Below are positions 1-14,898 of a DNA stretch of 64,000 bases, in pieces (positions within the stretch are counted from its first letter, which is position 1; every line of letters begins with the position of its first letter). Below the pieces are notes generated by a model. The model saw only the letters and a program-made list of their open reading frames with translations. It was not told where the DNA came from and searched no databases. The translations under genes and the position numbers were made by a program. The stretch covers positions 525,139-589,138 of the forward strand of contig NW_005434658.1 of NCBI RefSeq assembly GCF_000315625.1. Reading direction: 5' to 3'. Origin of the DNA: Guillardia theta CCMP2712 (Eukaryota; Protista; Cryptophyta).

Positions 1-2071
1 GAGCCTGCACATCCTTGGCCTCGTTGAGGCCGTAGATCTCAGTAACCACTTGCTCTCCTTCCTTGGCAATCTTGTCGATCTGCCAGCCATGATCAGAAGT
101 GTCGAAGCCGATGCAAGAAAAGTTCACCTGCTTCAAGAACTTCTCGTCAACGTTTCCATAATTCGCGATGAGGTCACGAAGAGCATTAACGAAGCGTTTT
201 CCGTTCACTTGCTGGCTTTTTCTCTCAGTGCCTTGAAAACCCCAGGCGTCAATAGATTTTTCAGTAGGAATCTAAGTCATCTACCGTCAGGGTTAAAAAC
301 CTTTTCGCGGGGTTTGAAGGCTTCCACGAATTGAGCTTTCCTTGCCTGGCTCATCTTCTTTAGTCGCGTACTCGCTCAAAGGATAAGAGACCTCGGGGTC
401 TTCCGTTCGCATCAGCTTGCGGATGAGGCGAATCTCATCGGGCATGGAGGCATCCTTGTACTCGATGGCCTTGTCTTTCAACATGGTCATGACCTAAAAC
501 AGTCATCATGTCCACGATCTTCTCTCCTTCACTCGTCAAGAACCTCGACAGCAGGCTGCGCTCCTGCCTTGCGAGCTTGATCTATGTTGGCCTCGAGAAG
601 CAGGATGACGCTCTCATCCAAACCGCCCTTTGCCTGCATAATACCGCTTCAGCACGTGCAAGCCATCCTCTCCGCCTCTCACATTGAGGAGCATGAGCTC
701 CTTGCGCATTCCGTTGAGGTCTCCGGCCTTCAACACCTTCTGCAGCGCGTCGGAGGCTTTCTGGATCCTGGCGCTCATGCAAGCTTGGATGGCGCTGTTC
801 AACTGAGTCAAGAGCTCCTTCTGGGGCCCATCTTCTTGCATCTTCTCGTTCAGCTGAAGTGCGCGTCAGAGGATCGCGGGCCTCACAGCTCCAAAGCATC
901 ACCCGCTCCAAGAAGCGCATGTCGATCTTGTCGTATCCGGCCTCAACGGCAGTCGAGATCTTGCTCGGGTCCTTGATCAGCTCTTGCATGAAGGCGTCGT
1001 AACTGCCAAAGGGTGAGCTTGACGCGCCTCTTTCAACGTCCATCACGTTGCAGAAGCAAGGTCCGCTGTGCTGTAAGAGTCCAGTGAGAGAGCAGAGGTC
1101 GACAGCCCGGCTGCCTCGATGTCGTCTTTCGAGACATCCCCGCGCTCCATCTTCAAAGGCAGTCAGAGGTGTCAGGGTGTGACAGCAGTCGTTTCCCACC
1201 GCTGCCTTGAGGATCTTCTGCATCAGGTCCGTGACCTGTCGTGAAAGAGCATGAGTAGAGGATGATGTCAGGAAGCATGCATGCTCTCACAGCGTCCTTC
1301 AGAACAGCCAAGGTCTCCTTCTCATCCGCATCCTTGGTGTCCTCGATCTTCCTTGCCAGGACTGCACCAGACTAGTTCAGATCAAAGCTAGCTGACCTTT
1401 TCATAACAAAAAAATGTAAACAGATGCAATCATTACAATTGTAGAAGCTGTCGTCCAACTTGTCCAAGTTCTTCTCCACCACCTTGGGCAACTCGTCGGG
1501 ATTCCTGGACGAATGTCAGCATTTATTTCCGGCAGGAGTCTCAGCCGTACGTGAAGGCCAACTCGGCGAGCAAGATCTCGTAGTCGGACGCCTGATGATA
1601 CATCCGTCAGCGAGGCGTCTTCCTCGACCTCACTGGTAGCAACCTTTGATACAGCTTTCTTTGCAGCATCATTCGACTTGTCGCTGGGGTCGGACGGACC
1701 GATCTGCCGGCATATCACGATAGAGCACGAGCTAGGGATTCTTCTGCTCTCTTACGGGGATATCTACGCCCATTCTAAGCTTAAGTTGTTGGCGTGGGCG
1801 CAGAGAAAACCCCTGATTGGGGCGCTGTCCTAGGATGGAGCACGCCGAGGGCAGTTGAGACCTCTGTCCAGGCATAGCAGGCGTATTTACATACGCGGTA
1901 CCATGGCATTGGTACAGGCCCTGATGAGCATAAGCTCCAACCAAGAAGCTGAGAATCAGCCCTGTAAAAAGAGCATTTCAGCAAATCCCGTCCGTACATC
2001 CCTATCAATCCATCTAGGATTGGAAATATTTTACGATCTGCAACCAAGGTACTTATGCTTTTTCCTCGCAT
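1..2071 (-). CDS. Multi-exon, probably plastid-directed protein of unknown function; 3' end runs off the window start
   Basis: Manual splicing gives MRGKSISTLVADRLILSFLVGAYA (signal-like), then ...SLRPRQQLKLRM (transit-like), then helical body (KVVEKNLDKLDDSFYNFL; LDESVILLLEANIDQARK; PDEIRLIRKLMRTEDPE). From memory this resembles the At4g37920-type chloroplast family; unverified. Many ~45-50 nt GT-AG introns. Confidence 0.6.
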
Positions 2072-2602
2072 CAAGTCTCTGCCCAGTCCTCTCTTTCGAC
2101 AATCTACTCCTCTCAGCCTCTCTCTGCTCACTCTGACCCCTTCCACACCCAGTCCTACTCTCCATGGCCTCGTACTCACCGCATCCGGCCATTGCTGCAC
2201 CCCCCATATCGCGGCCTCCAGCTTTCATCGCTACCGGCAGTGGTGGAATGTGATGCAGTTTTACTTCTCCAGCCCCCCATGAAAACACTATATTAAGTAA
2301 ACTTTCTTGATATAGTTTTTAATATATGTAAACATTTATTCATACAAACAAAGGAGTGGTGGTGGGTGACTCCTTTTGGCACTCTTAAAGGGATGGGCCC
2401 GGCGTGTGGGAGAACCGAATGGAAAATGATTCGATTCGACTTGAATCAGTTCAAATCAAACCGGGCCCCGGCGTCCGGGCCGAACCGGTTCAACTTGTGC
2501 ATTACCGAATCTGAGGCAGGCTTGCTTCTCAAGAAAAGCGATCAGGCAACGATGCGATCGCACTCAGGGGCGGTGGGAGTGGCGATGAGACACGAGTAGC
2601 GG

Positions 2603-4491
2603 ATGACCGTCCGTGGCATGTTGGAGGGAAGGAGATGGAGGGGATGTTTCATCGTCATGCTCGTCCTATGCAACCATGCCCGTCGCACCGACAACTTGGG
2701 GTCTACGCTGGTTGTCCCCAGGGGGCTTGAAAACGGGGGGATGCTGCTGAGGCTAAGAGGGTTCGGATCAGAGAGTTCTGGAGTGTTGGATAAAAATATA
2801 AGATGGTCCGAAGAAATGGGTTCAAGTCAGGAGGAGGAGGAGGAGGAGGAGGAGGAGGAGGGGAAGGCAGCTGGAGACTCCGATCCCGAGGAATCTGAGC
2901 TGGACCCTGAAACTTGGGTGCGCAATTTACCATCCAACATTACAGATGATCCGGAGTTTATGAAGCTGTTCTACGAACTTGAAGAATCGCTCACAAACAC
3001 CTCTCTGCTGGATTTTACTCCAAAGGAGGATAGAATGTGAGATAAATTATGCTCATAGCCTGGTGCATACTCTGATTTTTGACCTCAAAGTCGGGTAGAA
3101 TTCTGCGATGCCGCTAGCGATTGCGACGAGAAGACGGTCTGCACACAATTTGATTTCCCACTTCTGATCGTGTTTGTACCCTGATAATGCAGTTTTTTTA
3201 GGTAAAGGAGTTACATAGGAAGTATGGATGCAGATACGCAGACTTCATCAATAGCCGCTGCGAACGCACAAATATCACCGTGCTCATGGTAGCTTGCGTT
3301 GTAGCTGGTCGAGTGGCACATCTAATTTATGACACGACAGCATGCAGCAGCAAGCGGGAGCATGGAGATTGTCGAATACCTACTGAAACATGGCGCGAAT
3401 CCCAGGGTATGTGCACTGAGACGGGGTGGTGGTTGACAATCAACAGGCAGTTGGCTCTTTGAATGAGACAGCCATGCATCTTGCGGCACATGAAGGGCAT
3501 GCAGCTATTTGTGTTGAGCTGTATTGTGCTGCTCCTGAGGTTTCCTCTCTTCTGCTATAACTCTGCGATCTCCGATAGTATGACTATCACTGGTCAAGGT
3601 GTTACATTGGAAAGACTCATTCAACGCAACTCCAATCATGAGATCCATCGACATGGGTTGGCGTACTGCACTAAGACGCTATACAACATGGGAGGTAAAG
3701 TAGAGACTTTTGGACCTGTAAGTGAAACCTTCAGAGAGGTCGTTGGCATGAACATGATTCCATGTGATGTTAGGTATGTCAAGTACAGAAATTTTGCAAT
3801 GGAATGCAGTGGCCAGTCTTGACAGATGAGGTATTGGCGGATGATGAGGTAAACTCTCAAAGAGATTTTCTTCTTTTCGCTTTGTCAATAGCGTTTCTGC
3901 TTGAAGATCTTTCGAAAGAAATGTTGATCATGTTTTTATTTCTGCATTGTCAATAGCATGTCTCCCTGTTGATCTTTCGAAAGAGATGGTGTTCATGTTT
4001 TTCTTTTCGCTTTGTCAACAGCATATCTGCCTGTTTTCGTTTCTTTGCAGAAGTTGTAGCGAAATGGTTCTAACGCTCGTATCACACAGCATGCTTGCCC
4101 TCTGTGTTTGTACGGGTACATTCTCCCAGCGGTTCCACAGGAGTTCGAAGGCACCCCTATGGATTTTTGTGCTCTTTTACCGCCAGAATTCTATCCCTGC
4201 CCGTTTCCTGTCTTGCCTCGCGACGGATCTGGTCCACCCAGAGCGGTATGAATGGAAGCGCTTATGAGCTGCCCTTGACTGTTTCTGCAGGGACCATGCT
4301 GGGAGCCTATCATCAATGGCACTCGACTGAATTATACTGGAACAGGGGTTGTACAGAGCTGGCCAAGAGGGTATGATTATTTTGCTGAGACAGAAGAGAA
4401 GGCGAAAAGGAAGAGCAAGAAAAGGATTTATGCAAATCGTCAGGTCAAGGTGCTCCAGCCAAGACGGACGTTCGAGGAGGGGTTGGATTGA
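2603..4491 (+). CDS. Ankyrin-repeat protein with hydrophobic N-terminus, LRLRGF motif and poly-E tract
   Basis: Spliced exons give NITVLMHAAASGSMEIVEYLLKHGANP and NETAMHLAAHEGHAAICVEL (ankyrin consensus). Downstream exons stay in frame (…EVLADDE|RNGSNAR…GPPRA|GPCWEP…TFEEGLD*), stop TGA at 4489-4491. One internal junction near 3540-3580 was not resolved. Confidence 0.7.
3855..4035. repeat. Tandem repeat, ~3 copies of 65 bp, inside an intron (3849-4059)
   Basis: tgtcaa(t/c)agc starts at 3883, 3948 and 4013; gatctttcgaaaga at 3906 and 3971. Confidence 0.85.
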
Positions 4492-4532
4492 ACTTCTATC
4501 TTTAATGACAAACAAAAAAAAATCATACAAAT

Positions 4533-4955
4533 CTAGTGTGAAAATGAAGATCCTCGTGCAAGCATCAAAGCTGCTGACCAGTCGGAGACCTCAGACGCCG
4601 AACGCACCGGTGCCTGCAAGCTTTCGAACTTCAAGGTGGTGAATTCAATTTCCCAATTGAAACTGGCTTGCTTCAACAGAAGCTCTGCAGATGATGCTAA
4701 AAGCTGCATGTCCCTCGCCTGTGCTGCCTGGAGCTCAGCACTGTGTACAAACTCTACGCCATCCAATGGCAAAACGTTCTGTGTCGAGTGTACCGCACTG
4801 CTCTTGGACGATGCCGCAGACATATTGCTAACAGTCTCCGGGCAACCAAGTCCGAGATCCATAGCGAGCGCAGCAGACAGATCTGTTTTCTTTGCAGGCG
4901 ATGAGGACATGAACCTTGGAGTCGCTGCGCGGAGCAAAGCAGGAAGTCGCTGCAT
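4533..4955 (-). CDS. Small intronless protein (~140 aa) with mitochondrial presequence-like N-terminus
   Basis: ATG at 4955: MQRLPALLRAATPRFMSSSPAKK (R/S/A/L-rich, no acidic residues). Open to TAG at 4533. Confidence 0.55.
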   Translation of the reverse strand: MQRLPALLRAATPRFMSSSPAKKTDLSAALAMDLGLGCPETVSNMSAASSKSSAVHSTQNVLPLDGVEFVHSAELQAAQARDMQLLASSAELLLKQASFNWEIEFTTLKFESLQAPVRSASEVSDWSAALMLARGSSFSH

Positions 4956-5009
4956 GGCGGGGGCGGGAGGAAGTGAAGCGCTTCGTGAATGAGCAGCCTT
5001 ATTATGTTG

Positions 5010-6745
5010 CAAGGGAGGGGTCGGATGAGCCCTTTCCCCCACCCCTTCATCCAGTGCAGGTAAAGTGGGAAGCTAGGTTGCTAGGGTAGGGGTGGATCAA
5101 ATTAATTTAATAGTGAAGGGGTGTGGGTAGAATGACTGGCAGCAGTTCCAGAAAACTTGCCAGTGAAGGGTGGGTACTTAGGGTAGAATCAAGGGGTTGT
5201 TGTATACTTTCGAATGCCCGCAAAAACATTATTGAATGCTTGCGACGGGGCAGGGTGGTAGGGTGATGTCGCAGGGTTGGATAAGTGGGTGGGTGGGGTA
5301 CATGATGGGGGTAGGATTCAAGGGGATTCAAGGGCTAAGTTCCCACCAGGGGTCCCGGACGTTTCTATAGAAGAGGAGGGGTGGAATCATAAATTGAGGA
5401 GTGTTTGCGTCGGTTGAGCCTTTATAAATCGGGCATGTGGGGTACTCACACAAGAACCCCTCCTTTTAAAGTTTTTTTTTTTTAGTACAAGGGGTGGGGT
5501 GATGAAACGAAAATACTCCATTTCCCGAACGGAACGTCGCAGGAGGCCGAGGGACGTGAGGGATCTCCTTGGGATCTCCTCCTATTTGAATCGCATGTGT
5601 AAAGGGAAATCGTTCAAATTTGAAAATTCACCAACAATGTTCAAATTCAAATATATATAAAGGCAATGCTCCGTTGATGAGTTCTCGCATCTGAAGTCCG
5701 CCTCAGAGCCTCAACCCGTCCAGCCGGGCCGGGGCCCCCGGAGTTCCAAATGGTGATGAGTCCGGTTCAAGTGCAGGTCAACTATGGGGAGCCTTAACTT
5801 GGAGATCTTGAGGTACGGTCGCAGCATTTCTCATTTATTGTGATGGCCATGCGTATTTAACATAATCGCTCACTTAGAAAATATTGCCTCTATGCCCTTC
5901 TGCTCCAATCTTGTGCCTCATGCTTCCTGTACTACACATACCCCATTTCTCTTCGCTGGATTGAAGGGTTGAGGATGCAACCCCGAGAGCACGAAAAAGT
6001 CTCTTTTCAGAATTATTTCATGAAATACCGTCCTGCTCCATCCCTGAAATAAATTTCGAATATTTTTCTTTATATTTCAATTTTGAAAAATTATTTTTGC
6101 CTTTTTGGACAGAATTTGTGGGTCACAGTTCAAATGTTGTCACAGATCCCTCGCGTACCCCCACCCCATCAACAACACTAAACCCCACTACCCCACCCGC
6201 ACTGCTGATACTTAAATTGGAAGACCAAGTCTATATGCCTGAAGGCAAGTGAAAATGCGGTAGTAACAATAGGAAATTCAGAGCCTTGTCAGGGCTTTCA
6301 CAGGACAGATGGCCCAGCACATCAGGTTTGTGAGTTCCGACCCCCTTCTGAGAAAGGTGCAGCCAGGAAGGGGTGTTTGATGAGTAAAAGGTTGAATCTC
6401 CACATTTCAAACTTCCTTCTATGAAAATTTGAAATAAATATACTGTGGCGAAGAGAAGTTTGACATTCTGGACAAGGATTTAATAAACGTTTTATGCTTT
6501 CTCAATAGGGGTAGGGTTCTAGGAGAGTGTGGGTTGTTGGGACGGGGGTGAAATGACCAGGGGTGATTAGAACTGTATTTGTGTGGGTGGGGGTAGATGG
6601 GCATTGAACATAGTAGTGTTTGCCATCAAAGGGGGGTGGGGGTAGCCCCATGCGTCCCGACTGTAACAATGGTCTAAAAAAACGTTTTTCTATAGGGTCC
6701 CATTGTAATCAGAAAGGGGGGTACTATGAAATAGAGGGGTAGTAA
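5010..6745. other. Intergenic GGGGT(A/G)/TACCCC word-mosaic blocks interleaved with AT-rich TTCAAA/TTTGAA blocks
   Basis: G-skewed runs at 5010-5500 and 6500-6745, C-skewed run at 6150-6200, AT-rich blocks at 5584-5660 and 6000-6135. No credible ORF. Confidence 0.6.
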
Positions 6746-7326
6746 TTAAAAGACAATAGTTTAACTCACTTTAGATAGGAAAATTAGCAAAATTTACTGA
6801 AATTTGTTGAAGATAAGTAAAAATGAGAGTACAGAATGGCATCTATTCTTTTTGAATGTAAATTCTCAGACTCGAAGCAGGAGGCCGCCCCGTCCTTTAT
6901 GACGCAACCCCATCTCGCTACCTGCTCCTTGCATACCTTCCCGTTCTCTTGCCTTTGCTTTTTTGCCAGCACCGTTTGTCCTCCCCTCCCTCCTCCCTCC
7001 TCCCTCCTCCCTCCTCCTGTCACCATCACCTCAGTTCTTCCCTTCCCACCCATCATCCTGCCCCTCTTATGCATCCGCGCAGGCTGTCATTTGCCTTCTT
7101 GCCTCTTGGACTGGGCATCTTTGGAATTGATACTGTACTGTGCTGCTGCATGGTTTATAATTTTCCCTCATTTTTTCCATTATCAAGTTTGTTGTTGTTG
7201 TTATCACCATGTTGCCTCCTTCTCCTCGTAACTCGCATCACCCCATTCGGGAGTAACAATACAACATGCATGCCTTGATGTTTACATGCGATTGAAAAAC
7301 TTACTTTCATCCCAGGTTTGGGCGCA

Positions 7327-9369
7327 ATGGTTTATATTGCACGTTTGGCCTTGGTTGCCGCCGTTTTCTGTGCAGATTATGCGGCAGGGTTTGTGAATGG
7401 ACCCACAGGCTTCGGCCTCAGAAGGGCTCGCCTTCCTTCAGTTTCTCAACAGAAGCGAGTTTCCAGGAATGTGCTCATGTCAGCTACTCTTGACCCTTCG
7501 GGCAAGACTGAACCCGAAACGAAGATGAACATAGAAGAGGCGTGGAAAAGCTTCCTCAAGGTTTCTCCCCTTACCAGGAAGATCAACGCGCAGAGCAGCG
7601 ATGGGAGGAAGACGGTCGTTATCACCGGTGCCTCGAGTGGTATTGGCTTGCAGACGGCAAAGGCCATGTCTGCCGACAAAGGATGGCATGTTATCATGGC
7701 TGTACGTTCCTACTCCAAGGCTGCTAGGGCTGCAGAGGAGATTGGAATGGAGCCAGGAACTTACACCATTATGAATCTGGACCTTGCCTCTCTTTCCAGC
7801 GTGAGAGATTTTGTGAACCAGCTCAGATTGCTTGGTCGTCCCATTGATGCAATCGTTTGCAATGCTGCTGTGTGGTATCCCCGCGATACTGCTCCTCGCT
7901 TGACAGTCGATGGCTTCGAGGAGGCGGTTGGAACGAACCACCTTGGTCATTTCCTGCTTTGCAATCTGCTTCTCGGGGACCTTCCTGAGGGTGATGGGCG
8001 CGTTGTCTTCATCGGAACTGAGACTGCGAATGATGGTTTGGCTGGATTGATCCCGCCAGTTGCAGACCTCGGAAAGCTTGAAGGAATGGCTGCTGGCATG
8101 AAGAGCACCATTGATGGTGGAAAGTTTGAGCCTACCAAGGCTTACAAGGATTCAAAGGTTTGCAACGCAATTGTAATGCGTGAGATGAACAAGCGCTACG
8201 GAAAATCTCGCGGTCTTATCGTGAATGCTATGTTCCCCGGTTGCATCGCAGAGTCTCCTCTCTTCAGGCAAAAGCGTGCTTGGTTCCGGTGGCTGTTCCC
8301 TAAGTTCCAGAAGGCCATCACAAAACAGTTCGTGCCCGAGGAAGTGGCGGGTCAGAGGGTTGCAAACGTTGTTGCAGATGAGGAGCTTGGTGTTGGAGGA
8401 ACTTACTGGAAGTGGAATGCACAGGCTGGAAAGGACTTCACCCGTGTAGCCTTCGACCAGCAGAAGCAAGCAGCTGCGAACCTTGTCAAGATTCCAGCAG
8501 AGGCATTGGATGAGATGATCTCGGAGGCCGTGTGGGATCTTTCCTCTGCTCTTGTTGGACTTGGAGTCGCGCCCGAGATCTCCTTCGCGGCAAACAAGGA
8601 GTCGCTCACCTTGCAGGGTAAGTATGTTCCGGCATCACTGGCTAAGGCAAGCGTGATGCTCAAGAAGCTTAGGGAAGACATGTCATCTTTGAAGGACCAG
8701 AAAGAGGTAAGCGTCTAGCTGTGTTCTTGTTTACACGTACTGACAATCCCAAGGTCATGGCAATGGTCGAGGATGCTGAAGGGAAGACAGCTGAGGCTGT
8801 TGGAACTCTCTACTACTGGGGAAGGAGAGTGTCTGCACCCAAGATTACCTTCTCTGGCAACTACGAAACTCCACAGGACAAGCTTCAGATGCAGCTCTTG
8901 GTTGACAAGCCTCGTGCGGATCCTGTTGCAGCGGACGTCCTCCTTAAGGGCTTGACCTCTGCCTTGAAGAACTACGGCGCCGAAACCAAGCCTGCACCTG
9001 GCATGACTTTCATCGATGAGCGCGAGGGTAAGACCGGGGATGTTGCGGAAGACAACATGAAGATCAAGCTCGAGCCCTCGTGGACTGCCAACGATGATTC
9101 CATGGCCATGACCAAGGAGATGCTCGGCAAGGAGATGCTCGGAAGTGACACGAGAGAAGATCTGAAGGTCGTGTCGAGAGAGCAGGTGAGACAGATGGAA
9201 CTTGGAGTTGTCTTGTGCTGATGTCTCGTCGTAGGTGATGCAGTGGACAGCTGAGATGGATAAGATCAAGGCTCCTCCCGCTGGCATTGATGCTCAGGTT
9301 TTCGGTGAACGCGACTCGGTGAAGCGTCTTGTCTTCGAGGCCGTCTCACGAGGAGCGGTCAGGAACTAG
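7327..9369 (+). CDS. POR: Light-dependent NADPH:protochlorophyllide oxidoreductase (LPOR), plastid-targeted, with long C-terminal extension; exons 7327-8706, 8754-9185, 9235-9369 (648 aa)
   Basis: Signal peptide plus AAG|F transit peptide. Motifs ITGASSGIG, CNAAVW, GTNHLGHFLL, catalytic YKDSK, PGCIAESPLFR, YWKWN. Two phase-0 GT-AG introns of 47 and 49 nt. Confidence 0.93.
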
Positions 9370-9659
9370 ATGACGTCACTAATGGAAGTGAGTTTTGGAT
9401 TACTTCTTCTCAACGGGAACTTCTCTCGACCTCTAGATCGTGGGAAATCGAACCGCGCTTGTTGTTGATAGTTATGGTGCAATCTTTTATCTTTGTCAAA
9501 GTAAAGTATAATTTCGAGTGCATCGGTTCCGAACTTAGAACTGATCGCAACTTGCCAAGTTTTCAGTCACTGTGTCAAGCTCTCTCAGCATGGCCACTGG
9601 CTTATTAAGTATTGCTAACTGAGTTGAACGGGTTCAGTTCAACAAGGCTTTCGGTTCGG

Positions 9660-9850
9660 AATTGAAGTTTCGGCTGCCGCCGGTCCGGGGCTCAGTCCGG
9701 CCGGCGCCGCCGGCGAGCAGTGAGCCGTGATGGCCACTGGGGGGCCCGGACTCCCGGCGTCACCAACTCCCGTCCGATCGCCGTGCCGGACAGTGGGAGT
9801 CCGCCGGGCTCCAAGTTGGGCCGCCCGGCTGATGGGGTTTTGGTGGTTTT
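9660..9850. promoter_or_regulatory. CCGG/GGCC-rich GC island upstream of the gene starting at 10009
   Basis: Dense ccgg, ggcc, gactc/gagtc and cagtg words just before the ATG. Regulatory role is inferred from position only. Confidence 0.45.
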
Positions 9851-10008
9851 GACATATTTTCTTGCGCCGTTGAAAACGGCCGAAATGAAGTGGAGGAAGG
9901 AGGAGAGGGCGTGAGGAGAAGGGAGGCAAGCCTGGTAGACTGAAAGCTTCCACGGCAAGACATGCTCGCTCATACCCTTTTAAAGAACATCCTCCTCCTG
10001 CCGGCAAC

Positions 10009-13000
10009 ATGAGCGGCAGGGCGGGCCGTTGGATCAGCAGGGACGGGACCGGGAATGACTCGGGGGACGACGAGGTGAAGGCGGGGAGCCCGGAGTCCAT
10101 GTGCGTGGAGACGCTTCTCTGCAGCAAGAGCATGGAGAAGAGCATGTCAGAGAGGGAGGTAGGGGACTTCAAGCAGCTGAGAGGGCTCCTCATCGAGTTT
10201 CTCATCAAGAAGATCGATTCCAGCAATGCCATCATCATGTGGGACCTTGCCGACAGGTCCGGAAGGTACTCTCAACTTCCCCTCGTGCAACCGTGTGATG
10301 TTCTCGGCAGCAAAGCGCTGGCAGATGCCTCATTCCTGTACATCCAGCGGAACTTCCCTGTCAGATCTGCCTGACTTCCTTCCCCTGTCTGATCGACCTG
10401 TCCAGGTTATCCTCTCCAGCTCCGACGGGCTCTGGGATCTGCCGTTCAAGTGAGCTCTGCCCTCGGCATGACGACCAGCAGGGAGCCAAGTGTGACCTCC
10501 TGCTGCCCCTGCAGGTACTTCCTCCGGCTCCTCAAGAGCGCAAACCTCGCCGTCAGCTCCGAGAATGACGCGATCGAGAGCATATTCCATTGGACTTCCA
10601 TAGACGATCTGAGGAGATCAGAGCCCGAGGTCTCCTCCTCCCTACCCTTGTCATCTCCCTTCCCTTCTCTTGTCTCCCTTCCCTTCTCCTCTCCTCCCCT
10701 TCCCTCCCTTCGCCCCCCTCCGCCTCCCCTCCCGTTCCAGTCTCCTTCCCACCACACCTTTCTTCCTGCATTTCTTCTCTCTCGCATGAGATCCCTCACC
10801 ATCCGCAGGTCATCACCTACCGCTCGCTCTCTTCGCAGCTCGAGCGATTGCGGCAGGAAGTTCTCCCGTCTCTCAAGGACCACGAGAGGAGCGAGTACCT
10901 GTCCTTACAGGATCAGATACGAGACTGCGAGGAGAAGGAGCAGCTGCTGGATCAGTCCCTGGAAGCTCTCGATCGCCTTCAGAAGTCTTTGAGCAGCTTG
11001 CAGCAGAAGCTGGTGGAGGCTGCTGAAGAGCTGGCGGCAGCGAGACGCCAACTGCCGAAGCCCAAGATGATGAAGGTGAGAGAAGAGCAGGGAATAAGAG
11101 TAGACAGGATGCAAGGGAATGCGAGCAAGAGGAGGTGGCGGGAGGAGGGAGCTCGGTAGGCGGGAGCAAGCAGGGAGAAGGGGAGAGGGAACTTGTCGAA
11201 TGCTATCAAGCTGAGGGCGTGTGCAGTTGCGCTATTTCAACATGGAGCCCCCAAACCTCATCAGGCGCATAATGTGTGCCGTTGCCGTCCTTCTCAACAT
11301 CGAAGGGGAGATGGAGAGGTACTCCTTCCTCCCACCCCCAGGACGACAGGCTCCTCGGACTGTGAGTTGGAATATCTGAGCTTGACTTGATCCTTCCTTG
11401 CTGTCCCTCACAGCCTCCCCCCCTCCCCCCCCCCCCCACTTCCCAGTTCCTCTCTCCGTGATTTCTTCTTTCTCCCCCCCTTCTCTCTCCTTCCTTTCTG
11501 CTTGGCGGCCCCTCTTTCCCCAGTCAGCGAGTGACGCTCCTGCCTGGCATGCGCGCGCAGCTCCTTGTTCCACTTGGCTCAGCCTCTTGCTCGTATTCCT
11601 CCTTGACTTTCTCGCTCATCCCTCCCTGCCAGGTCCAGCGAGAGCTCAGCATGGAACAAGCCCTTGCCCTCTACAACGACCCGGACCTGCCGAAGCTCTT
11701 GAAGGACCTGGACCCCTCCCTCCTCTCCCGCGAGCAGTTCGACCTCTTTGCTCACGTGGCCTCAAACCGAAACTTCTCGGTCCACATGATCGAGCGGCGG
11801 CTGGGAGAGTCGAAGAAGGAGATCCCGACGCTCCTGACCACCTGGCTCTTGTCTGTGCGCACAGTTGTGCAGCTGAGGATCGAGGTGACTGTCAGCGTTG
11901 ACCTCCTCGTCTCACCCTCTGCTCTGCAGGAAGAGAAGACGGAGAAACTCATCGTGAAGCAGGAGGAGCAGGTGAAGGAGCGGGAGCAGAGCTTGTGCGA
12001 CTCCCAGGATCGCAAGGTGTGGGAGGAGGGAGCGGGGCTGTGGCAGCTAGCTGACAAGTTGGCAGCGGAGGACGGCAAGCCGGTACGGGAAGGTGGAGGA
12101 GGAGCTGCTGAAGGTGACGGCGATGGAGGCGCAGCTGGGTAGGAGGGCTGAGAGCCGTTGGTAGCCATGACCTCGTCCGCAGACATCGACCACAAGCTCT
12201 CCTACATGCGGCTGGTGCAGAGCAACAACGTGACCCTCAGGAGATTCTCGACCCTCCTGCGGGCAGTGCGATGGGTGACGGTCCCGCAAGGTCCCTTGCC
12301 CTGTTTTCCCTCCTCTCCTCCCCCCACTATTCTCACTCCACTACTTGTCCTTCCTCCTCGGCCCCCTGCTCCTCCTTCCTCTCTCACCATTCTTTGTCCT
12401 CCTCCCCGTCCTTCCCTGATTCCTCTCTCTCTGCCCTTTCACGATTTCTCCTCCTCCTGCCTCCTTTACTTGCTCATCTTTCATCTCCCCGACTGCTTCC
12501 TTCATCTTCTCCACCTCTCTTCCCCCGGCCTTCCTTGCTCACCTGCCTCCAGATTTCGTCGAGTTCTTCGTGCTCAAACATCCGCTCGTCAAGCGCTTTG
12601 AGGGGAGGAGCGAAATCGTTGCGATCCTGCAACACGCAAGAGAGGACGCGCGAGCTCTCCTCCTTTCATCCTCTGGTCATCACAAACAGGCGCATGCCGG
12701 CAGGCTCGTCCGCGCTTCTCTCGCCTCCCACCTCGACGCGGAGATCGCAGCAGTGCTGGCGAGGCAGACGAGGATGAGGAAGGGGCTGGAGAGCAGGAGG
12801 AAGCAGCACCGGCTGACTTGGCGATCGTCGTCTTTCATCCGCGAGCTGAACTGCCAGGGAGAGGACGGAGGCTTCTTGGGGTGCACGGAGAAGGGAAGCA
12901 GTGCAGTGCTGTGCAGGCACGGAGCAAGAGAAGCAGCCATCTACCTCTTCGGAGGCCTCGACCTGCAGGGCAGGGCCCATGCTTTCGTCCGCCGCTTCGT

Positions 13001-14898
13001 CCCGACTAGCTGGGGCGGACACTGGGAGCTGTGCAACCCGATGCAGCATGCCCGTGCCTTCTCGACCGCAGCAGTGCTCCAGAGTGAGGAGCTGGAAGGA
13101 GGAAGCGGAGGAGCAGGAGCAGGTTTTGTGCAGAGGTTCCTTGTGTGTTGCGGGATCTCAGAAGAGAGCGAGTGCCTGAGCTCAGCTGAAGTCCTGCAGG
13201 TCAAGCTGGAGGACCAGGGGAACGTCACGCTTGAGCAGGAGCTGCTGCGCAAGGGACACTGGAGCTTCATCGGGAGCGTGCAGCAAGCTCGATACCTCGC
13301 CTCCTCCTTCCTCCTCAGCAAGTCCGTCTACATCATCGGGGGATTCAAGAGCAACAGGGACCCTGTCATGACGATCGAGCGGCTGCGCCCCTCCTTCGCG
13401 AGCTTCTGGCTCCGGTCGATCACTGACTTCACCCGCCATGCTGCTCCCTGGAAGACCATCAGCAAGGAGGAGCAGGAGGAGGAGCAGGAGGAAGAGGAAA
13501 ATGTGATACCTGCTCATCAACGTGCTCATCAACGAAGTGAGCAGGACAGCCCGACAACGAGCAGCTTTACTCGAGCATCGCCCTCTTCTTCCCGCCTTGT
13601 GCTGTTCTCCTCCTACGAGAGGAAAGCAGATGCGCTCGTCCTCAGCCCAAAGACCTTCCGCACGGGAGCTCAGACCGCAAGGGAGCCGATCATGTCAGGG
13701 GGATGGGGAGGGGACGGGGGCAGCCAGCAGTGGTGGAGGAACAGGGACAGGTGCTGGAGCGGGAGGTTTAGAGCTTCCCCTCCTCAGCGGATAAAACCTT
13801 TCCTCCAGCCCGAGGCGCTGCAGCGACAAGCCCTTCACCTGAAGACGGCACACGTCAAGACTTGGGACTCCTTCCAACCTCATGCCGTCTCCTCCTCCTC
13901 CTCCTCCTCCATGTTCCCATCCTTGTCGCTCAACTCTCCGCCCTCCTCTCCCCTGCGGCGCGTCGACCAAGAACCCCCGAAGCCTGTCGTTGACCACTGG
14001 ACAGCATGGAAGCGGAAGGAGCTCGCGCGCCGAGAGCTTGTGAAGACGTGAGCGACGCCCTGCCTTGTTGCACGCGATGACGAGATGCCAGGAGGAAGAA
14101 GGAGGAGAGACGCAGAGCTCTCCAAGAGGACTCACAGGAGAACGATGAGCGGGAGGAGGAGAATCCGAGAGACTCGAAGGTGTCTTGCCTGTTGTTACAT
14201 GTTTCTGTTCTACTCATGTCTGCCGTCAGCAGAAGGAGAGGGACTCTTTCGTGAAGAGCAACAAGCAGGGAGCAGGAGCAGGAGAAGAAGGACCAAAGGC
14301 TCTTTCGATCGCCTCCCCAAACGTTTTCGACGACAAATTCCACTACAGGGTCCTTGCTGCCAAACGTCTGCAGTGCTTGTGAGCAGCTTCTTCCTCCCTT
14401 CTTCACCTCATCGCCGTCGGCCCTGCAGGTACAGGGGACACCTTGCTCGTTCCCTTCGCTCCAAGGCGGAGCAGGAGCTCTCGTCGATCTACCGCTCTGT
14501 CAACCAAGAACAGGAAGGGAGCGTACCTGCAAGGTGAAGCATCTTCCCTCCCCCCCCCCGCCTCCTCCTCCGCCTCCTCCTCCTCCTCTGATCCTGTACT
14601 AGTTCCTTCTACAAACGGCTGTCCCGCACCGTGCAAGATCAGGAACTCCTCGCGCTGCTCAAGGAGTCTTTCAGTGAGCCGATTCTCTTCCTCCCTCACC
14701 GTCTGTAACGAGACGAGCAGGAGCATACGGACCCGCAGGCGCTCTCGCGATTGGGGTGAAGGAGAAGGTGAGAAAGCTAAGGCAGAACTTGCTGCTGTTC
14801 TGATTGAACCATCGCAGGATTTCCTGAGAATGGCTCTGTCAGATACGATCAGGTTGAGGAGCTCTACAGCCTCCTCAGAGCACCTACGAGTCAAGTGA
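10009..14898 (+). CDS. Large multi-exon protein: coiled coil, Kelch-like repeats and an IQ motif
   Basis: Kelch-type IYLFGGLD and VYIIGGF in ORF 12570-14051. Splicing at 14048, ~14180 and ~14379 continues in frame to LAAKRLQCLYRGHLAR (IQ consensus IQxxxRGxxxR). CT-rich introns. End approximate. Confidence 0.6.

What the first reader, a model, noticed from the sequence alone, without database searches (positions are those of the whole stretch)
8563..9369. LPOR carries a ~235-aa spliced C-terminal domain of unknown function, with a possible intron-retention switch
Seen: the LPOR fold ends at …WDLSSALVGL (~8562), but the frame continues and two clean phase-0 introns (8707-8753, 9186-9234) add 144+44 aa, giving 648 aa. 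The tail has normal composition (GTLYYWGRRVSAPKITFSGNYETP…). Retaining intron 1 stops at 8718 and gives a short 463-aa form. A perfect GTAAGT donor near 8618 offers another route. Known: plant and cyanobacterial LPORs end right after this final LVGL helix. I recall a C-terminally extended POR paralog in a diatom, which should be compared. Inference: the tail may be a fused partner, regulatory or membrane-docking module in chlorophyll a/c synthesis, possibly set by splicing or proteolysis.
Basis: partly seen in the sequence, partly recalled or inferred. Interest (0 to 1): 0.72.

Follow-up and report, generated by a model that had tools for sequence, protein, structure and literature searches.

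The report
LPOR fused to phycoerythrin-scaffold repeats
The only light-dependent chlorophyll-synthesis enzyme (LPOR) of the cryptophyte alga Guillardia theta carries a real, conserved 236-residue tail built from the same kind of repeat module that red algae and cryptophytes use to hold phycoerythrin beta subunits, which hints at an unreported physical link between chlorophyll synthesis and the phycobilin antenna.

Summary
RNA contigs from two studies splice out exactly 8707-8753 and 9186-9234 on one polyadenylated mRNA that ends near 9520. The DNA run keeps both introns. The 648-aa product is already public (Guillardia theta XP_005836929.1), and a 648-aa Hanusia phi transcript protein has the same junctions.

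The LPOR model TIGR01289 ends at residue 412, so residues 413-648 are extra. This tail occurs only in cryptophyte red-algal-type PORs, is under purifying selection, and is single-copy in the genome. A red-algal POR lacks it. The diatom POR2 extension is unrelated.

New here: the tail contains three beta-beta-alpha modules that each start with AP-x-I-x-hydrophobic. They match the CALM (cryptophyte-alpha-like motif) domain. In PDB-wide profile searches, the best hits are the Porphyridium LR6 linker at its two CALM domains (E 0.024) and cryptophyte phycoerythrin alpha subunits (E 0.027). hhalign against G. theta alpha subunits gives P 1.5e-5. The tail has no cysteine, so no bilin attachment site.

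Inference: the tail docks phycoerythrin beta subunits onto LPOR. That binding is untested.

The proposed intron-retention switch and the GTAAGT donor at 8618 have no support.

The parts
7021..7326 (+). 5' UTR (minimum extent)
   Evidence: The X8 RNA contig is collinear from 7021. The X1 contig starts at 7314.
7327..8706 (+). Exon 1 CDS, 460 aa: N-terminal bipartite plastid-targeting leader, LPOR core and first tail module
   Evidence: ORF. Pfam adh_short E 1.4e-23. RNA contigs.
7606..8562 (+). LPOR catalytic core, residues 94-412
   Evidence: TIGR01289 LPOR equivalog, E 1.9e-109, 366 bits against a cut-off of 331, model positions 3-314 of 315.
8563..8700 (+). CALM-like module R1 (residues 413-458; begins GVAPEISFAA)
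   Evidence: hhalign R1 vs R2: probability 93%, E 3.5e-7. The R1 profile's only PDB hits are the LR6 linker at CALM1, E 0.19. Found by the module-stack HMM in the genome.
8707..8753 (+). Intron 1 (47 nt, GT..AG, phase 0)
   Evidence: Skipped in RNA contigs of X1 and X8, present in DNA run X15. 10.6% divergent between strains against 1-3% in exons.
8754..9185 (+). Exon 2 (144 aa)
   Evidence: 100% identical to P0014 residues 461-604. RNA contigs.
8811..8828 (+). Aromatic motif YYWGRR (residues 480-485), placed like the aromatic first part of the CALM motif
   Evidence: Invariant or near-invariant in 12 orthologs. The pattern [YFW]..G....AP.I.hydrophobic has P 4.5e-5 in shuffles. The motif is defined in PMC7994580 Suppl. 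Fig. 3.
8829..8975 (+). CALM-like module R2 (residues 486-534; APKITF...)
   Evidence: hhalign with R1. Module-stack HMM, E 2e-14. Contributes to the LR6 CALM hit.
8985..9149 (+). CALM/alpha-subunit-like module R3 (residues 538-592; APGMTFIDER...EDNMKIKL), no Cys
   Evidence: Top two PDB hits are cryptophyte phycoerythrin alpha subunits, E 0.027 and 0.27. hhalign vs 9 G. theta alpha subunits: probability 79.6%, P 1.5e-5; score 29.5 against a shuffle maximum of 18.8. Absent in the Hemiselmis-type tails.
9186..9234 (+). Intron 2 (49 nt, GT..AG, phase 0)
   Evidence: Skipped in RNA contigs of X1 and X8 and in one raw RNA read of X22. Present in DNA.
9235..9369 (+). Exon 3 (44 aa plus stop). Together with 9150-9185 it forms the conserved C-terminal segment (PP.G.D..FGER..KRL..E..S.G)
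   Evidence: Ten invariant columns in 12 orthologs. No PDB or Pfam relative.
9370..9520 (+). 3' UTR and poly(A) site
   Evidence: The X1 contig ends at 9520 and is followed by A12. 3'-biased raw RNA reads of X22 pile up at 9223-9525.

Best explanation
Window 7327-9369 is the single nuclear LPOR gene of Guillardia theta. It is expressed as one spliced, polyadenylated mRNA that codes a 648-aa, plastid-targeted protein.

After the complete LPOR fold (to residue 412) comes a 236-residue tail. This tail is an array of three CALM-type modules (cryptophyte-alpha-like motif: beta-ribbon plus helix, starting AP-x-I-x-hydrophobic) followed by a conserved helical end piece. CALM modules are what red-algal phycobilisome scaffolding proteins (CaRSPs, LR6) and cryptophyte phycobiliprotein alpha subunits use to bind one phycoerythrin beta subunit each.

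Inferred mechanism: in the plastid stroma the tail docks up to three plastid-encoded phycoerythrin beta subunits (two in the Hemiselmis group) onto the chlorophyll photoenzyme. The tail itself carries no bilin, because it has no Cys. This would couple chlorophyll synthesis physically to the phycobilin antenna proteins.

Shown: the gene model, expression, conservation, the repeat structure, and the sequence kinship to CALM. Inferred: beta-subunit binding, stromal location, and any physiological role.
For: Splicing and poly(A). Identity with XP_005836929.1 and the Hanusia 648-aa transcript protein. LPOR ends at residue 412.

The tail is conserved in 12 cryptophyte PORs (21 invariant columns) and shows mostly synonymous change between strains, while introns diverge 10.6%.

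Internal repeat R1~R2: hhalign 93%, E 3.5e-7. AF2 secondary structure is 3x(beta-beta-alpha) plus helices.

Unbiased profile searches of 177,635 PDB sequences: the module stack gives LR6 as the top three hits, aligned on its CALM1 (331-365) and CALM2 (393-414), E 0.024-0.027. R3 gives cryptophyte alpha subunits as the top two hits, E 0.027 and 0.27. R1 alone gives only LR6.

hhalign R3 vs G. theta alpha subunits: P 1.5e-5, with 0 of 600 column shuffles reaching the score.

Foldseek's best-ranked chains are CaRSP1, LR6 and cryptophyte alpha subunits: 9 of the top 50.

The motif fits the published CALM consensus with exact spacing. The AP motif occurs three times (P 1.5e-5) and the aromatic-to-AP pattern has P 4.5e-5.

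LR6 and alpha subunits have a helix after the ribbon, as predicted here.
Against: Each database E-value is marginal (about 0.025). Pfam PF02972 does not hit the tail. The R2 and R3 HMMs do not retrieve alpha-subunit genes from the genome. The R2-alone and whole-tail profiles find nothing in the PDB.

The link from R1+R2 to R3+alpha is only P 5.6e-4, probability 30%. AF2 models have low confidence, pLDDT 38-49, and the VIA second look did not recover the CALM chains.

Cryptophyte phycobiliproteins function in the thylakoid lumen whereas LPOR needs stromal NADPH, so the two would meet only before beta-subunit export.
Confidence: 0.55

Rival explanations
1. The modules descend from CALM but no longer bind phycoerythrin beta. 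They serve LPOR itself, for example in oligomerisation, thylakoid docking or autoinhibition of the dark-state enzyme.
For: The modules have diverged far from alpha subunits and CaRSPs: PF02972 is silent. The most conserved stretches (YYWGRR, and the C-terminal FGER..KRL) are not part of the beta-binding ribbon. LPOR and lumenal phycobiliproteins sit in different compartments.
Against: The ribbon-start motif and the strand-2/helix pattern are kept in every repeat of every species. That fits a conserved binding partner of the CALM kind better than a relaxed linker.
Confidence: 0.2
2. The gene encodes a polyprotein. After plastid import the tail is cut off, giving an ordinary ~37 kDa LPOR and a free CaRSP-like scaffold (or a discarded peptide), as proposed for diatom POR2.
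For: Diatom POR2, predicted at 59 kDa, is detected at about 44 kDa (PMC4930169). The LPOR fold ends cleanly at residue 412.
Against: The first module starts immediately after the last LPOR helix, with no linker or low-complexity spacer. The diatom extension is unrelated. No protein-level data exist for cryptophytes.
Confidence: 0.12
3. The resemblance to CALM is chance. The tail is a cryptophyte-specific domain of unknown fold and function.
For: E-values are near 0.025. AF2 confidence is low. Several profile searches were negative.
Against: Two independent repeat profiles each land on this one small family as their best hit among 177,635 sequences, aligned exactly on the annotated CALM segments. 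This is backed by the shuffle-controlled hhalign, the Foldseek ranking and the published motif spacing.
Confidence: 0.1
4. Intron 1 retention (or use of the 8618 donor) is a regulated switch that makes a tail-less 463-aa LPOR.
For: Retention would stop translation after 3 codons. Short introns are prone to retention.
Against: There is zero contig depth over both introns in two RNA runs. Eleven RNA-type runs (X1-X11) hold 0.84-0.93 of the sampled words, and 0.93, the top value in four of them, is about what a spliced transcript lacking the two introns would hold (my arithmetic). The database 'short forms' are genomic contigs. Contigs cannot exclude a minor isoform.
Confidence: 0.03

Closest known systems
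Red-algal CaRSPs and the LR6 rod linker (CALM repeat scaffolding proteins; Rathbone et al. 2021, PMC7994580; PDB 7LIX, 7LIZ)
   Same: Both have tandem copies (2-5 there, 2-3 here) of a ~50-residue module that starts N-x-A-P-x-I-x-hydrophobic, often preceded by an aromatic segment. The module forms a beta-ribbon, followed by a helix in LR6. Neither has a chromophore Cys. The best PDB hit of the module profile aligns on LR6 CALM1 and CALM2.
   Different: Here the repeats are fused to an enzyme (LPOR), not to a Pfam00427 linker domain. The host is a cryptophyte, which has no phycobilisome. The leading Asn and the GQP of the consensus are not kept. Binding of phycoerythrin beta is not shown.
Cryptophyte phycobiliprotein alpha subunits (Pfam PF02972), single and tandem forms (PMC9951199)
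   Same: Module R3 aligns over 42-44 positions: AP-x-IT-x-D-x-R, the loop Gly, and [DE][DE]-x-M-x-[VL]-K-V. It comes from the same organism group and has the same ribbon-helix order.
   Different: R3 has no Cys for bilin attachment and no PF02972 hit at Pfam thresholds. No lumen-targeting signal is apparent in the leader (read by eye). It is embedded in a 648-aa enzyme rather than being a 60-80 aa free subunit.
Diatom and pelagophyte POR2 C-terminal extension (PMC4337275, PMC4930169)
   Same: Both are LPORs with an extra C-terminal region of unknown function, transcribed with the enzyme.
   Different: It sits on a different (prasinophyte-derived) POR lineage, is poorly conserved, and shows no profile similarity to the cryptophyte tail (hhalign probability 0.6%; scores at the shuffle mean).
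Canonical LPOR (TIGR01289) of cyanobacteria, plants and red algae
   Same: The core passes the equivalog cut-off. YKDSK and TGASSGIG are present.
   Different: Canonical enzymes, including the red-algal Madagascaria POR (385 aa), end within about 5 residues of the LVGL-equivalent helix.
LHPP idea in angiosperm etioplasts (PORA-bound pigment acting as antenna for PORB; from my own knowledge, contested in the literature)
   Same: The concept of an accessory pigment-protein feeding excitation energy to the LPOR-bound substrate.
   Different: No sequence relation. Here the putative donor would be a phycobiliprotein subunit recruited by a fused scaffold.

Membership tests
LPOR (TIGR01289, SDR superfamily) | Full-length match above the curated equivalog cut-off | tested here: met
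   E 1.9e-109, 366 bits against 331.35; residues 94-412; model positions 3-314 of 315.
LPOR (TIGR01289, SDR superfamily) | Rossmann GxxxGxG-type motif and catalytic YxxxK | tested here: met
   TGASSGIG and YKDSK are invariant in the alignment. Pfam adh_short E 1.4e-23.
LPOR (TIGR01289, SDR superfamily) | Light-dependent Pchlide reduction | not testable with these tools
   Enzyme assay needed. According to PMC4337275 this is the only por gene and there is no LIPOR in G. theta. It is the only full LPOR-like locus in the genome.
CALM domain / CaRSP family (PMC7994580) | Ribbon-start motif N-x-A-P-x-I-x-hydrophobic | tested here: met
   AP-x-[IVM]-x-hydrophobic occurs at residues 415, 488 and 541 (P 1.5e-5 in shuffles; none in the core) and is kept in all orthologs. 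The leading Asn is not kept.
CALM domain / CaRSP family (PMC7994580) | Aromatic segment about 8-10 residues upstream of AP (optional in the family) | tested here: met
   YYWGRR before R2 with the consensus spacing, P 4.5e-5. Absent before R1 and R3.
CALM domain / CaRSP family (PMC7994580) | Tandem repetition (2-5 copies, about 52 residues each) | tested here: met
   Three copies 73 and 53 residues apart. R1~R2 hhalign 93%. Two copies in Hemiselmis-type proteins.
CALM domain / CaRSP family (PMC7994580) | Detectable sequence kinship to accepted members | tested here: met
   The top PDB hits are LR6 CALM1/2 (E 0.024) and alpha subunits (E 0.027). hhalign P 1.5e-5 with shuffle control. The values are marginal individually.
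CALM domain / CaRSP family (PMC7994580) | Two-stranded beta-ribbon structure | tested here: inconclusive
   AF2 DSSP gives strand-strand-helix three times, but pLDDT is 38-49. Foldseek ranks CaRSP1 and LR6 first at E 0.06-0.07. VIA gives no support.
CALM domain / CaRSP family (PMC7994580) | Binds a phycoerythrin beta subunit | not testable with these tools
Cryptophyte phycobiliprotein alpha subunit (PF02972) | Pfam PF02972 match | tested here: not met
   There is no hit on the tail by protein scan or by genome-wide family search, which found 24 alpha-subunit places elsewhere.
Cryptophyte phycobiliprotein alpha subunit (PF02972) | Chromophore-binding Cys in the loop (FDxRGC) | tested here: not met
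   The G. theta tail has zero Cys. R3 reads IDEREG or DDRxx at that place.
Diatom POR2-type extension | Sequence similarity to the POR2 tails (for example Dactyliosolen fragilissimus P0026) | tested here: not met
   hhalign probability 0.6%. Score 10.4 against a shuffle mean of 11.0.

The most novel reading that the evidence does not exclude
The CALM tail tethers chromophorylated phycoerythrin beta subunits next to the LPOR active site so that they act as a green-light antenna for the photoenzyme. Excitation absorbed by phycoerythrobilin (about 545-565 nm) would pass to bound protochlorophyllide and drive chlorophyll synthesis in the green-dominated light that cryptophytes live in. That would matter most in species such as G. 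theta, which lack the dark enzyme. A corollary is that this fusion is a surviving Cys-less multi-CALM scaffold in cryptophytes, that is, a relative of the long-sought ancestor of the cryptophyte alpha subunit.
Probability: 0.15. Interest if true: 0.92.

Novelty: new variant of a known kind. Interest (0 to 1): 0.7.

Why it matters
LPOR is one of very few natural photoenzymes, and in G. theta it is the sole route to chlorophyll. A fused array of phycoerythrin-beta-binding modules would be the first physical connection between the chlorophyll branch and the phycobiliprotein antenna. Both draw on the same tetrapyrrole pool.

It also bears on the origin of the cryptophyte antenna. The current model derives the alpha subunit from a red-algal CaRSP. 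In the papers read here, the only cryptophyte relatives of CALM mentioned are alpha subunits, single or tandem. This tail is Cys-less and multi-CALM, sits on a gene of red-algal ancestry, and is present in both major plastid-bearing cryptophyte groups.

The idea can be tested directly with pull-downs, reconstitution and an action spectrum of Pchlide reduction.

Tried and rejected
- **Pfam, NCBIfam.** Neither gave a family for the tail or for single modules.
- **HMMER search of 1.84 billion representatives with a tail profile.** It returned only cryptophyte PORs and their fragments, so there is no free-standing or non-cryptophyte relative at that sensitivity.
- **PDB profile searches.** The whole tail, aromatic+R2, R2 alone and the C-terminal segment gave nothing meaningful.
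- **Genome-wide HMM searches with R3, R2 and the module stack.** They found only the POR tail itself.
- **AF2, run twice (4 and 12 sequences).** pLDDT was 38 and 49. Foldseek E-values were all above 0.05. The VIA second look listed only unrelated helical matches with Z below 4.
- **ESM Atlas structure neighbours (SRPBCC, AHSA1, DUF1499).** TM was 0.42 or less, so I dropped them.
- **Complex prediction of module R3 with a cyanobacterial C-phycoerythrin beta.** Two reference ids were not held. This gives no verdict, and I did not attempt it by any other route.
- **Homology with the diatom POR2 extension.** Rejected.
- **The 476-aa 'short forms' P0001 and P0015 as evidence of intron retention.** Rejected, because they are ORFs on genomic metagenome contigs that keep both introns.
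- **Raw RNA run X22.** It was 3'-biased with only 70 reads, too few to quantify retention.
- **Paper searches.** They found no paper that links CALM and POR or treats this protein.
- **Joining the exons.** Full-length analyses used the stored public proteins P0014 and P0002.
Full report
**Observation**

The ORF that starts at ATG 7327 encodes a short-chain dehydrogenase (Pfam adh_short, E 1.4e-23). It passes NCBI's LPOR equivalog model TIGR01289 (366 bits against a cut-off of 331). That match runs from residue 94 to residue 412, model positions 3-314 of 315.

The frame then stays open to 8706. The stretches 8707-8753 (47 nt) and 9186-9234 (49 nt) are GT..AG and phase 0. Exon 2 gives 144 aa and exon 3 gives 44 aa plus a stop at 9367-9369.

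**Transcript evidence**

I laid four runs on 6900-9900.
- A 2131-nt contig of run X1 covers 7314-9520 with exactly those two skips and then runs into poly(A).
- A 987-nt contig of run X8, from another study, has the same two joints.
- DNA run X15 is collinear with the genome.
- In the bins that contain the introns, depth equals exon depth times the exonic fraction of the bin (for example 4028.9 x 67/101 = 2672.7). So no assembled RNA contig covers either intron or uses the GTAAGT at 8618-8623.
- 3'-biased raw reads of X22 pile up at 9223-9525.

**Organism and public record**

The assembly (87.1 Mb, 669 contigs) and an exact cluster look-up identify Guillardia theta CCMP2712. The 648-aa protein XP_005836929.1/EKX49949.1, named 'protochlorophyllide oxidoreductase' (P0014), matches exon 2 at 144/144 residues. 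A 648-aa Hanusia phi transcriptome protein (P0002, 96% identical in the core and 92% in the tail) has the same residues across both junctions. The gene model is thus already public. What is not annotated is the nature of residues 413-648.

Whole-protein work used these stored proteins by reference.

**Distribution and constraint**

Word-index searches and a full HMMER search of 1.84 billion representatives with a tail profile found the tail only on cryptophyte PORs and their fragments: Guillardia, Hanusia, Proteomonas, Rhodomonas, three Hemiselmis species, and metagenome or Logan entries.
- The red-algal Madagascaria POR (385 aa) stops about 5 residues after the last LPOR helix.
- The tail is single-copy in the genome, and there is only one full LPOR-like locus. 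This agrees with PMC4337275, which states that G. theta has one por gene, of red-algal type, and no LIPOR.
- Against Hanusia, Rhodomonas and Hemiselmis, core identity is 96%, 80% and 65%, and tail identity is 92%, 46% and 38%. The tail keeps 21 invariant columns across 12 sequences.
- Two metagenomic Guillardia-like strains differ by 15-16% upstream and 10.6% in intron 1. They differ by only 0.9-2.9% in the exons, mostly at synonymous sites, and this includes the tail exons.

The tail is therefore a selected, structured part of the protein.

**What the tail is**

BLASTP of the protein against its own exon 2 hinted at an internal repeat. Profile comparison confirms that R1 (413-458) is related to R2 (486-534): hhalign probability 93%, E 3.5e-7. 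A third unit, R3 (538-592), has the same layout.

Each unit starts AP-x-[IVM]-x-hydrophobic, at residues 415, 488 and 541. Three such occurrences have P 1.5e-5 in composition-preserving shuffles, and the motif does not occur in the core. In both AF2 runs each unit is predicted as strand-strand-helix, though at low confidence (pLDDT 38 and 49).

Foldseek with the weak model gave no significant E-value. However, its best-ranked chains were Porphyridium CaRSP1 and LR6, followed by further phycobilisome chains and cryptophyte phycobiliprotein alpha subunits: 9 of the top 50. I treated that as a lead and tested it by sequence.

1. The R3 profile searched against all 177,635 distinct PDB sequences returns cryptophyte phycoerythrin alpha subunits as its two best hits: 7t8s_D at E 0.027 and 1qgw_A at E 0.27, over 42 positions.
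2. A stack of all 28 modules returns as its three best hits the Porphyridium LR6 linker (E 0.024-0.027). The alignment falls exactly on the two segments that Rathbone et al. define as its CALM domains, 331-365 and 393-414.
3. R1 alone hits only LR6.
4. R3 against nine G. theta alpha subunits, taken from the genome through PF02972, gives hhalign probability 79.6% and P 1.5e-5. The score is 29.5, against a mean of 9 and a maximum of 18.8 in 600 column shuffles.
5. The published CALM consensus (aromatic-x-x-G-Q-P / N-x-A-P-x-I-x-hydrophobic / V-x-V ...) fits R2 with exact spacing: Y-Y-W-G-R-R-V-S-A-P-K-I-T-F, P 4.5e-5. R1's GVAPEISFAA nearly equals a Porphyra CaRSP repeat, GLAPDISFAA.

The tail has no cysteine, like the red-algal CALMs and unlike the alpha subunits.

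**Evidence against the CALM assignment**

- Each E-value is marginal.
- PF02972 itself does not hit the tail.
- R2 alone and the whole-tail profile find nothing relevant.
- HMMs of the modules do not retrieve alpha-subunit genes from the genome.
- The bridge from R1+R2 to R3+alpha is only P 5.6e-4.
- The VIA second look did not recover the family.

Taking everything together, I put CALM ancestry of the modules at about 0.85. The reason is that independent repeat profiles each pick this one small family as their top hit in a whole-PDB search.

Hemiselmis-type tails have R1, R2 and the end piece but lack R3. The last ~55 residues (PP.G.D..FGER..KRL..E..S.G) are the most conserved part and have no detectable relative.

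**Mechanism (inference)**

In red-algal phycobilisomes each CALM holds one 'lone' phycoerythrin beta subunit. In cryptophytes the single-CALM alpha subunit does the same (PMC7994580). By homology, the LPOR tail should dock up to three beta subunits, or two in Hemiselmis.

The N-terminal leader has a hydrophobic signal peptide followed by AAG|F. By my reading, using what is known of cryptophyte plastid import, it has no lumen-targeting hydrophobic domain. LPOR also needs NADPH. I therefore place the protein in the stroma, where the plastid-encoded beta subunit is made and, from background knowledge, chromophorylated before export.

What the association achieves is open. The candidates are a holding or assembly platform, a coupling of the two tetrapyrrole end-products, or an antenna for the photoenzyme. 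I give beta binding about 0.5-0.55 and the antenna role about 0.15.

**Rivals**

- CALM-derived modules re-used for LPOR self-assembly or docking (0.2).
- Post-import cleavage into LPOR plus a free scaffold, as suspected for diatom POR2 (0.12).
- Chance resemblance (0.1).
- A splicing switch (0.03).

The diatom-type extension (for example Dactyliosolen fragilissimus, P0026) is unrelated: hhalign probability is 0.6% and scores sit at the shuffle mean. LPOR has therefore acquired C-terminal extensions independently in these two POR lineages.

**Novelty**

The searchable literature contains no paper that combines CALM with protochlorophyllide, or that treats this protein. The POR evolution papers mention the diatom extension only. 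The cryptophyte antenna papers describe single and tandem alpha subunits, not POR.

The finding is a new domain architecture of two known kinds: an LPOR, and a CALM repeat array.

**Not done**

cpeB is not in the nuclear assembly.

Noticed in passing
window 7300-7326: The X1 RNA contig starts at 7314, directly at an AG, and carries 8 unmatched letters (GCTGGTCA) before it. The X8 contig is collinear from 7021. This could be a 5'-UTR intron, an alternative leader, or a strain difference.
   Followed up: no
window 6975-7030: A run of CCTCC/CCCTCC repeats lies in the 5' UTR or promoter region of the POR gene.
   Followed up: no
window 10009-14051 (+): The downstream ORFs show only a weak, sub-threshold Kelch_6 match (12570-14048, E 0.0048, 17.3 bits against a cut-off of 25.3). 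No other family was found for the ORFs scanned in 582-14048. No phycobiliprotein or tetrapyrrole gene lies next to POR.
   Followed up: partly
L035 (G000:C70:181639-181767, minus strand): A 43-residue nuclear match to Pfam PF00502 (phycobilisome protein), E 3.4e-7. It may be a plastid-DNA insert or a diverged globin-type fragment. The real cpeB is not in the nuclear assembly.
   Followed up: no
L022/L023 (G000:C47:244147-244512, minus strand): Two PF02972 matches lie back to back in one open frame. This is apparently one of the 'tandem alpha subunit' genes described in PMC9951199.
   Followed up: no
P0008 (Rhodomonas salina, 143 aa) and P0007 (132 aa): These fragments carry the R3 and end piece of the tail. 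PMC4337275 listed R. salina as having only the stramenopile/haptophyte-type por, so it probably also has the tailed red-algal-type gene. In both fragments part of the sequence departs from the tail alignment, possibly unspliced or out-of-frame stretches (not checked).
   Followed up: no
L013, L014 (ENA PRJEB17505 metagenome contigs): These are genomic contigs of a Guillardia-like strain with both introns in place. They are 15-16% divergent upstream of the ATG but 1-3% divergent in exons. Their called 476-aa ORFs mimic a short POR isoform in protein databases.
   Followed up: yes
window 8715-9287 (minus strand): A 190-aa antisense ORF overlaps exon 2. It is a mechanical ORF only. All RNA joints are GT..AG on the plus strand.
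   Followed up: partly
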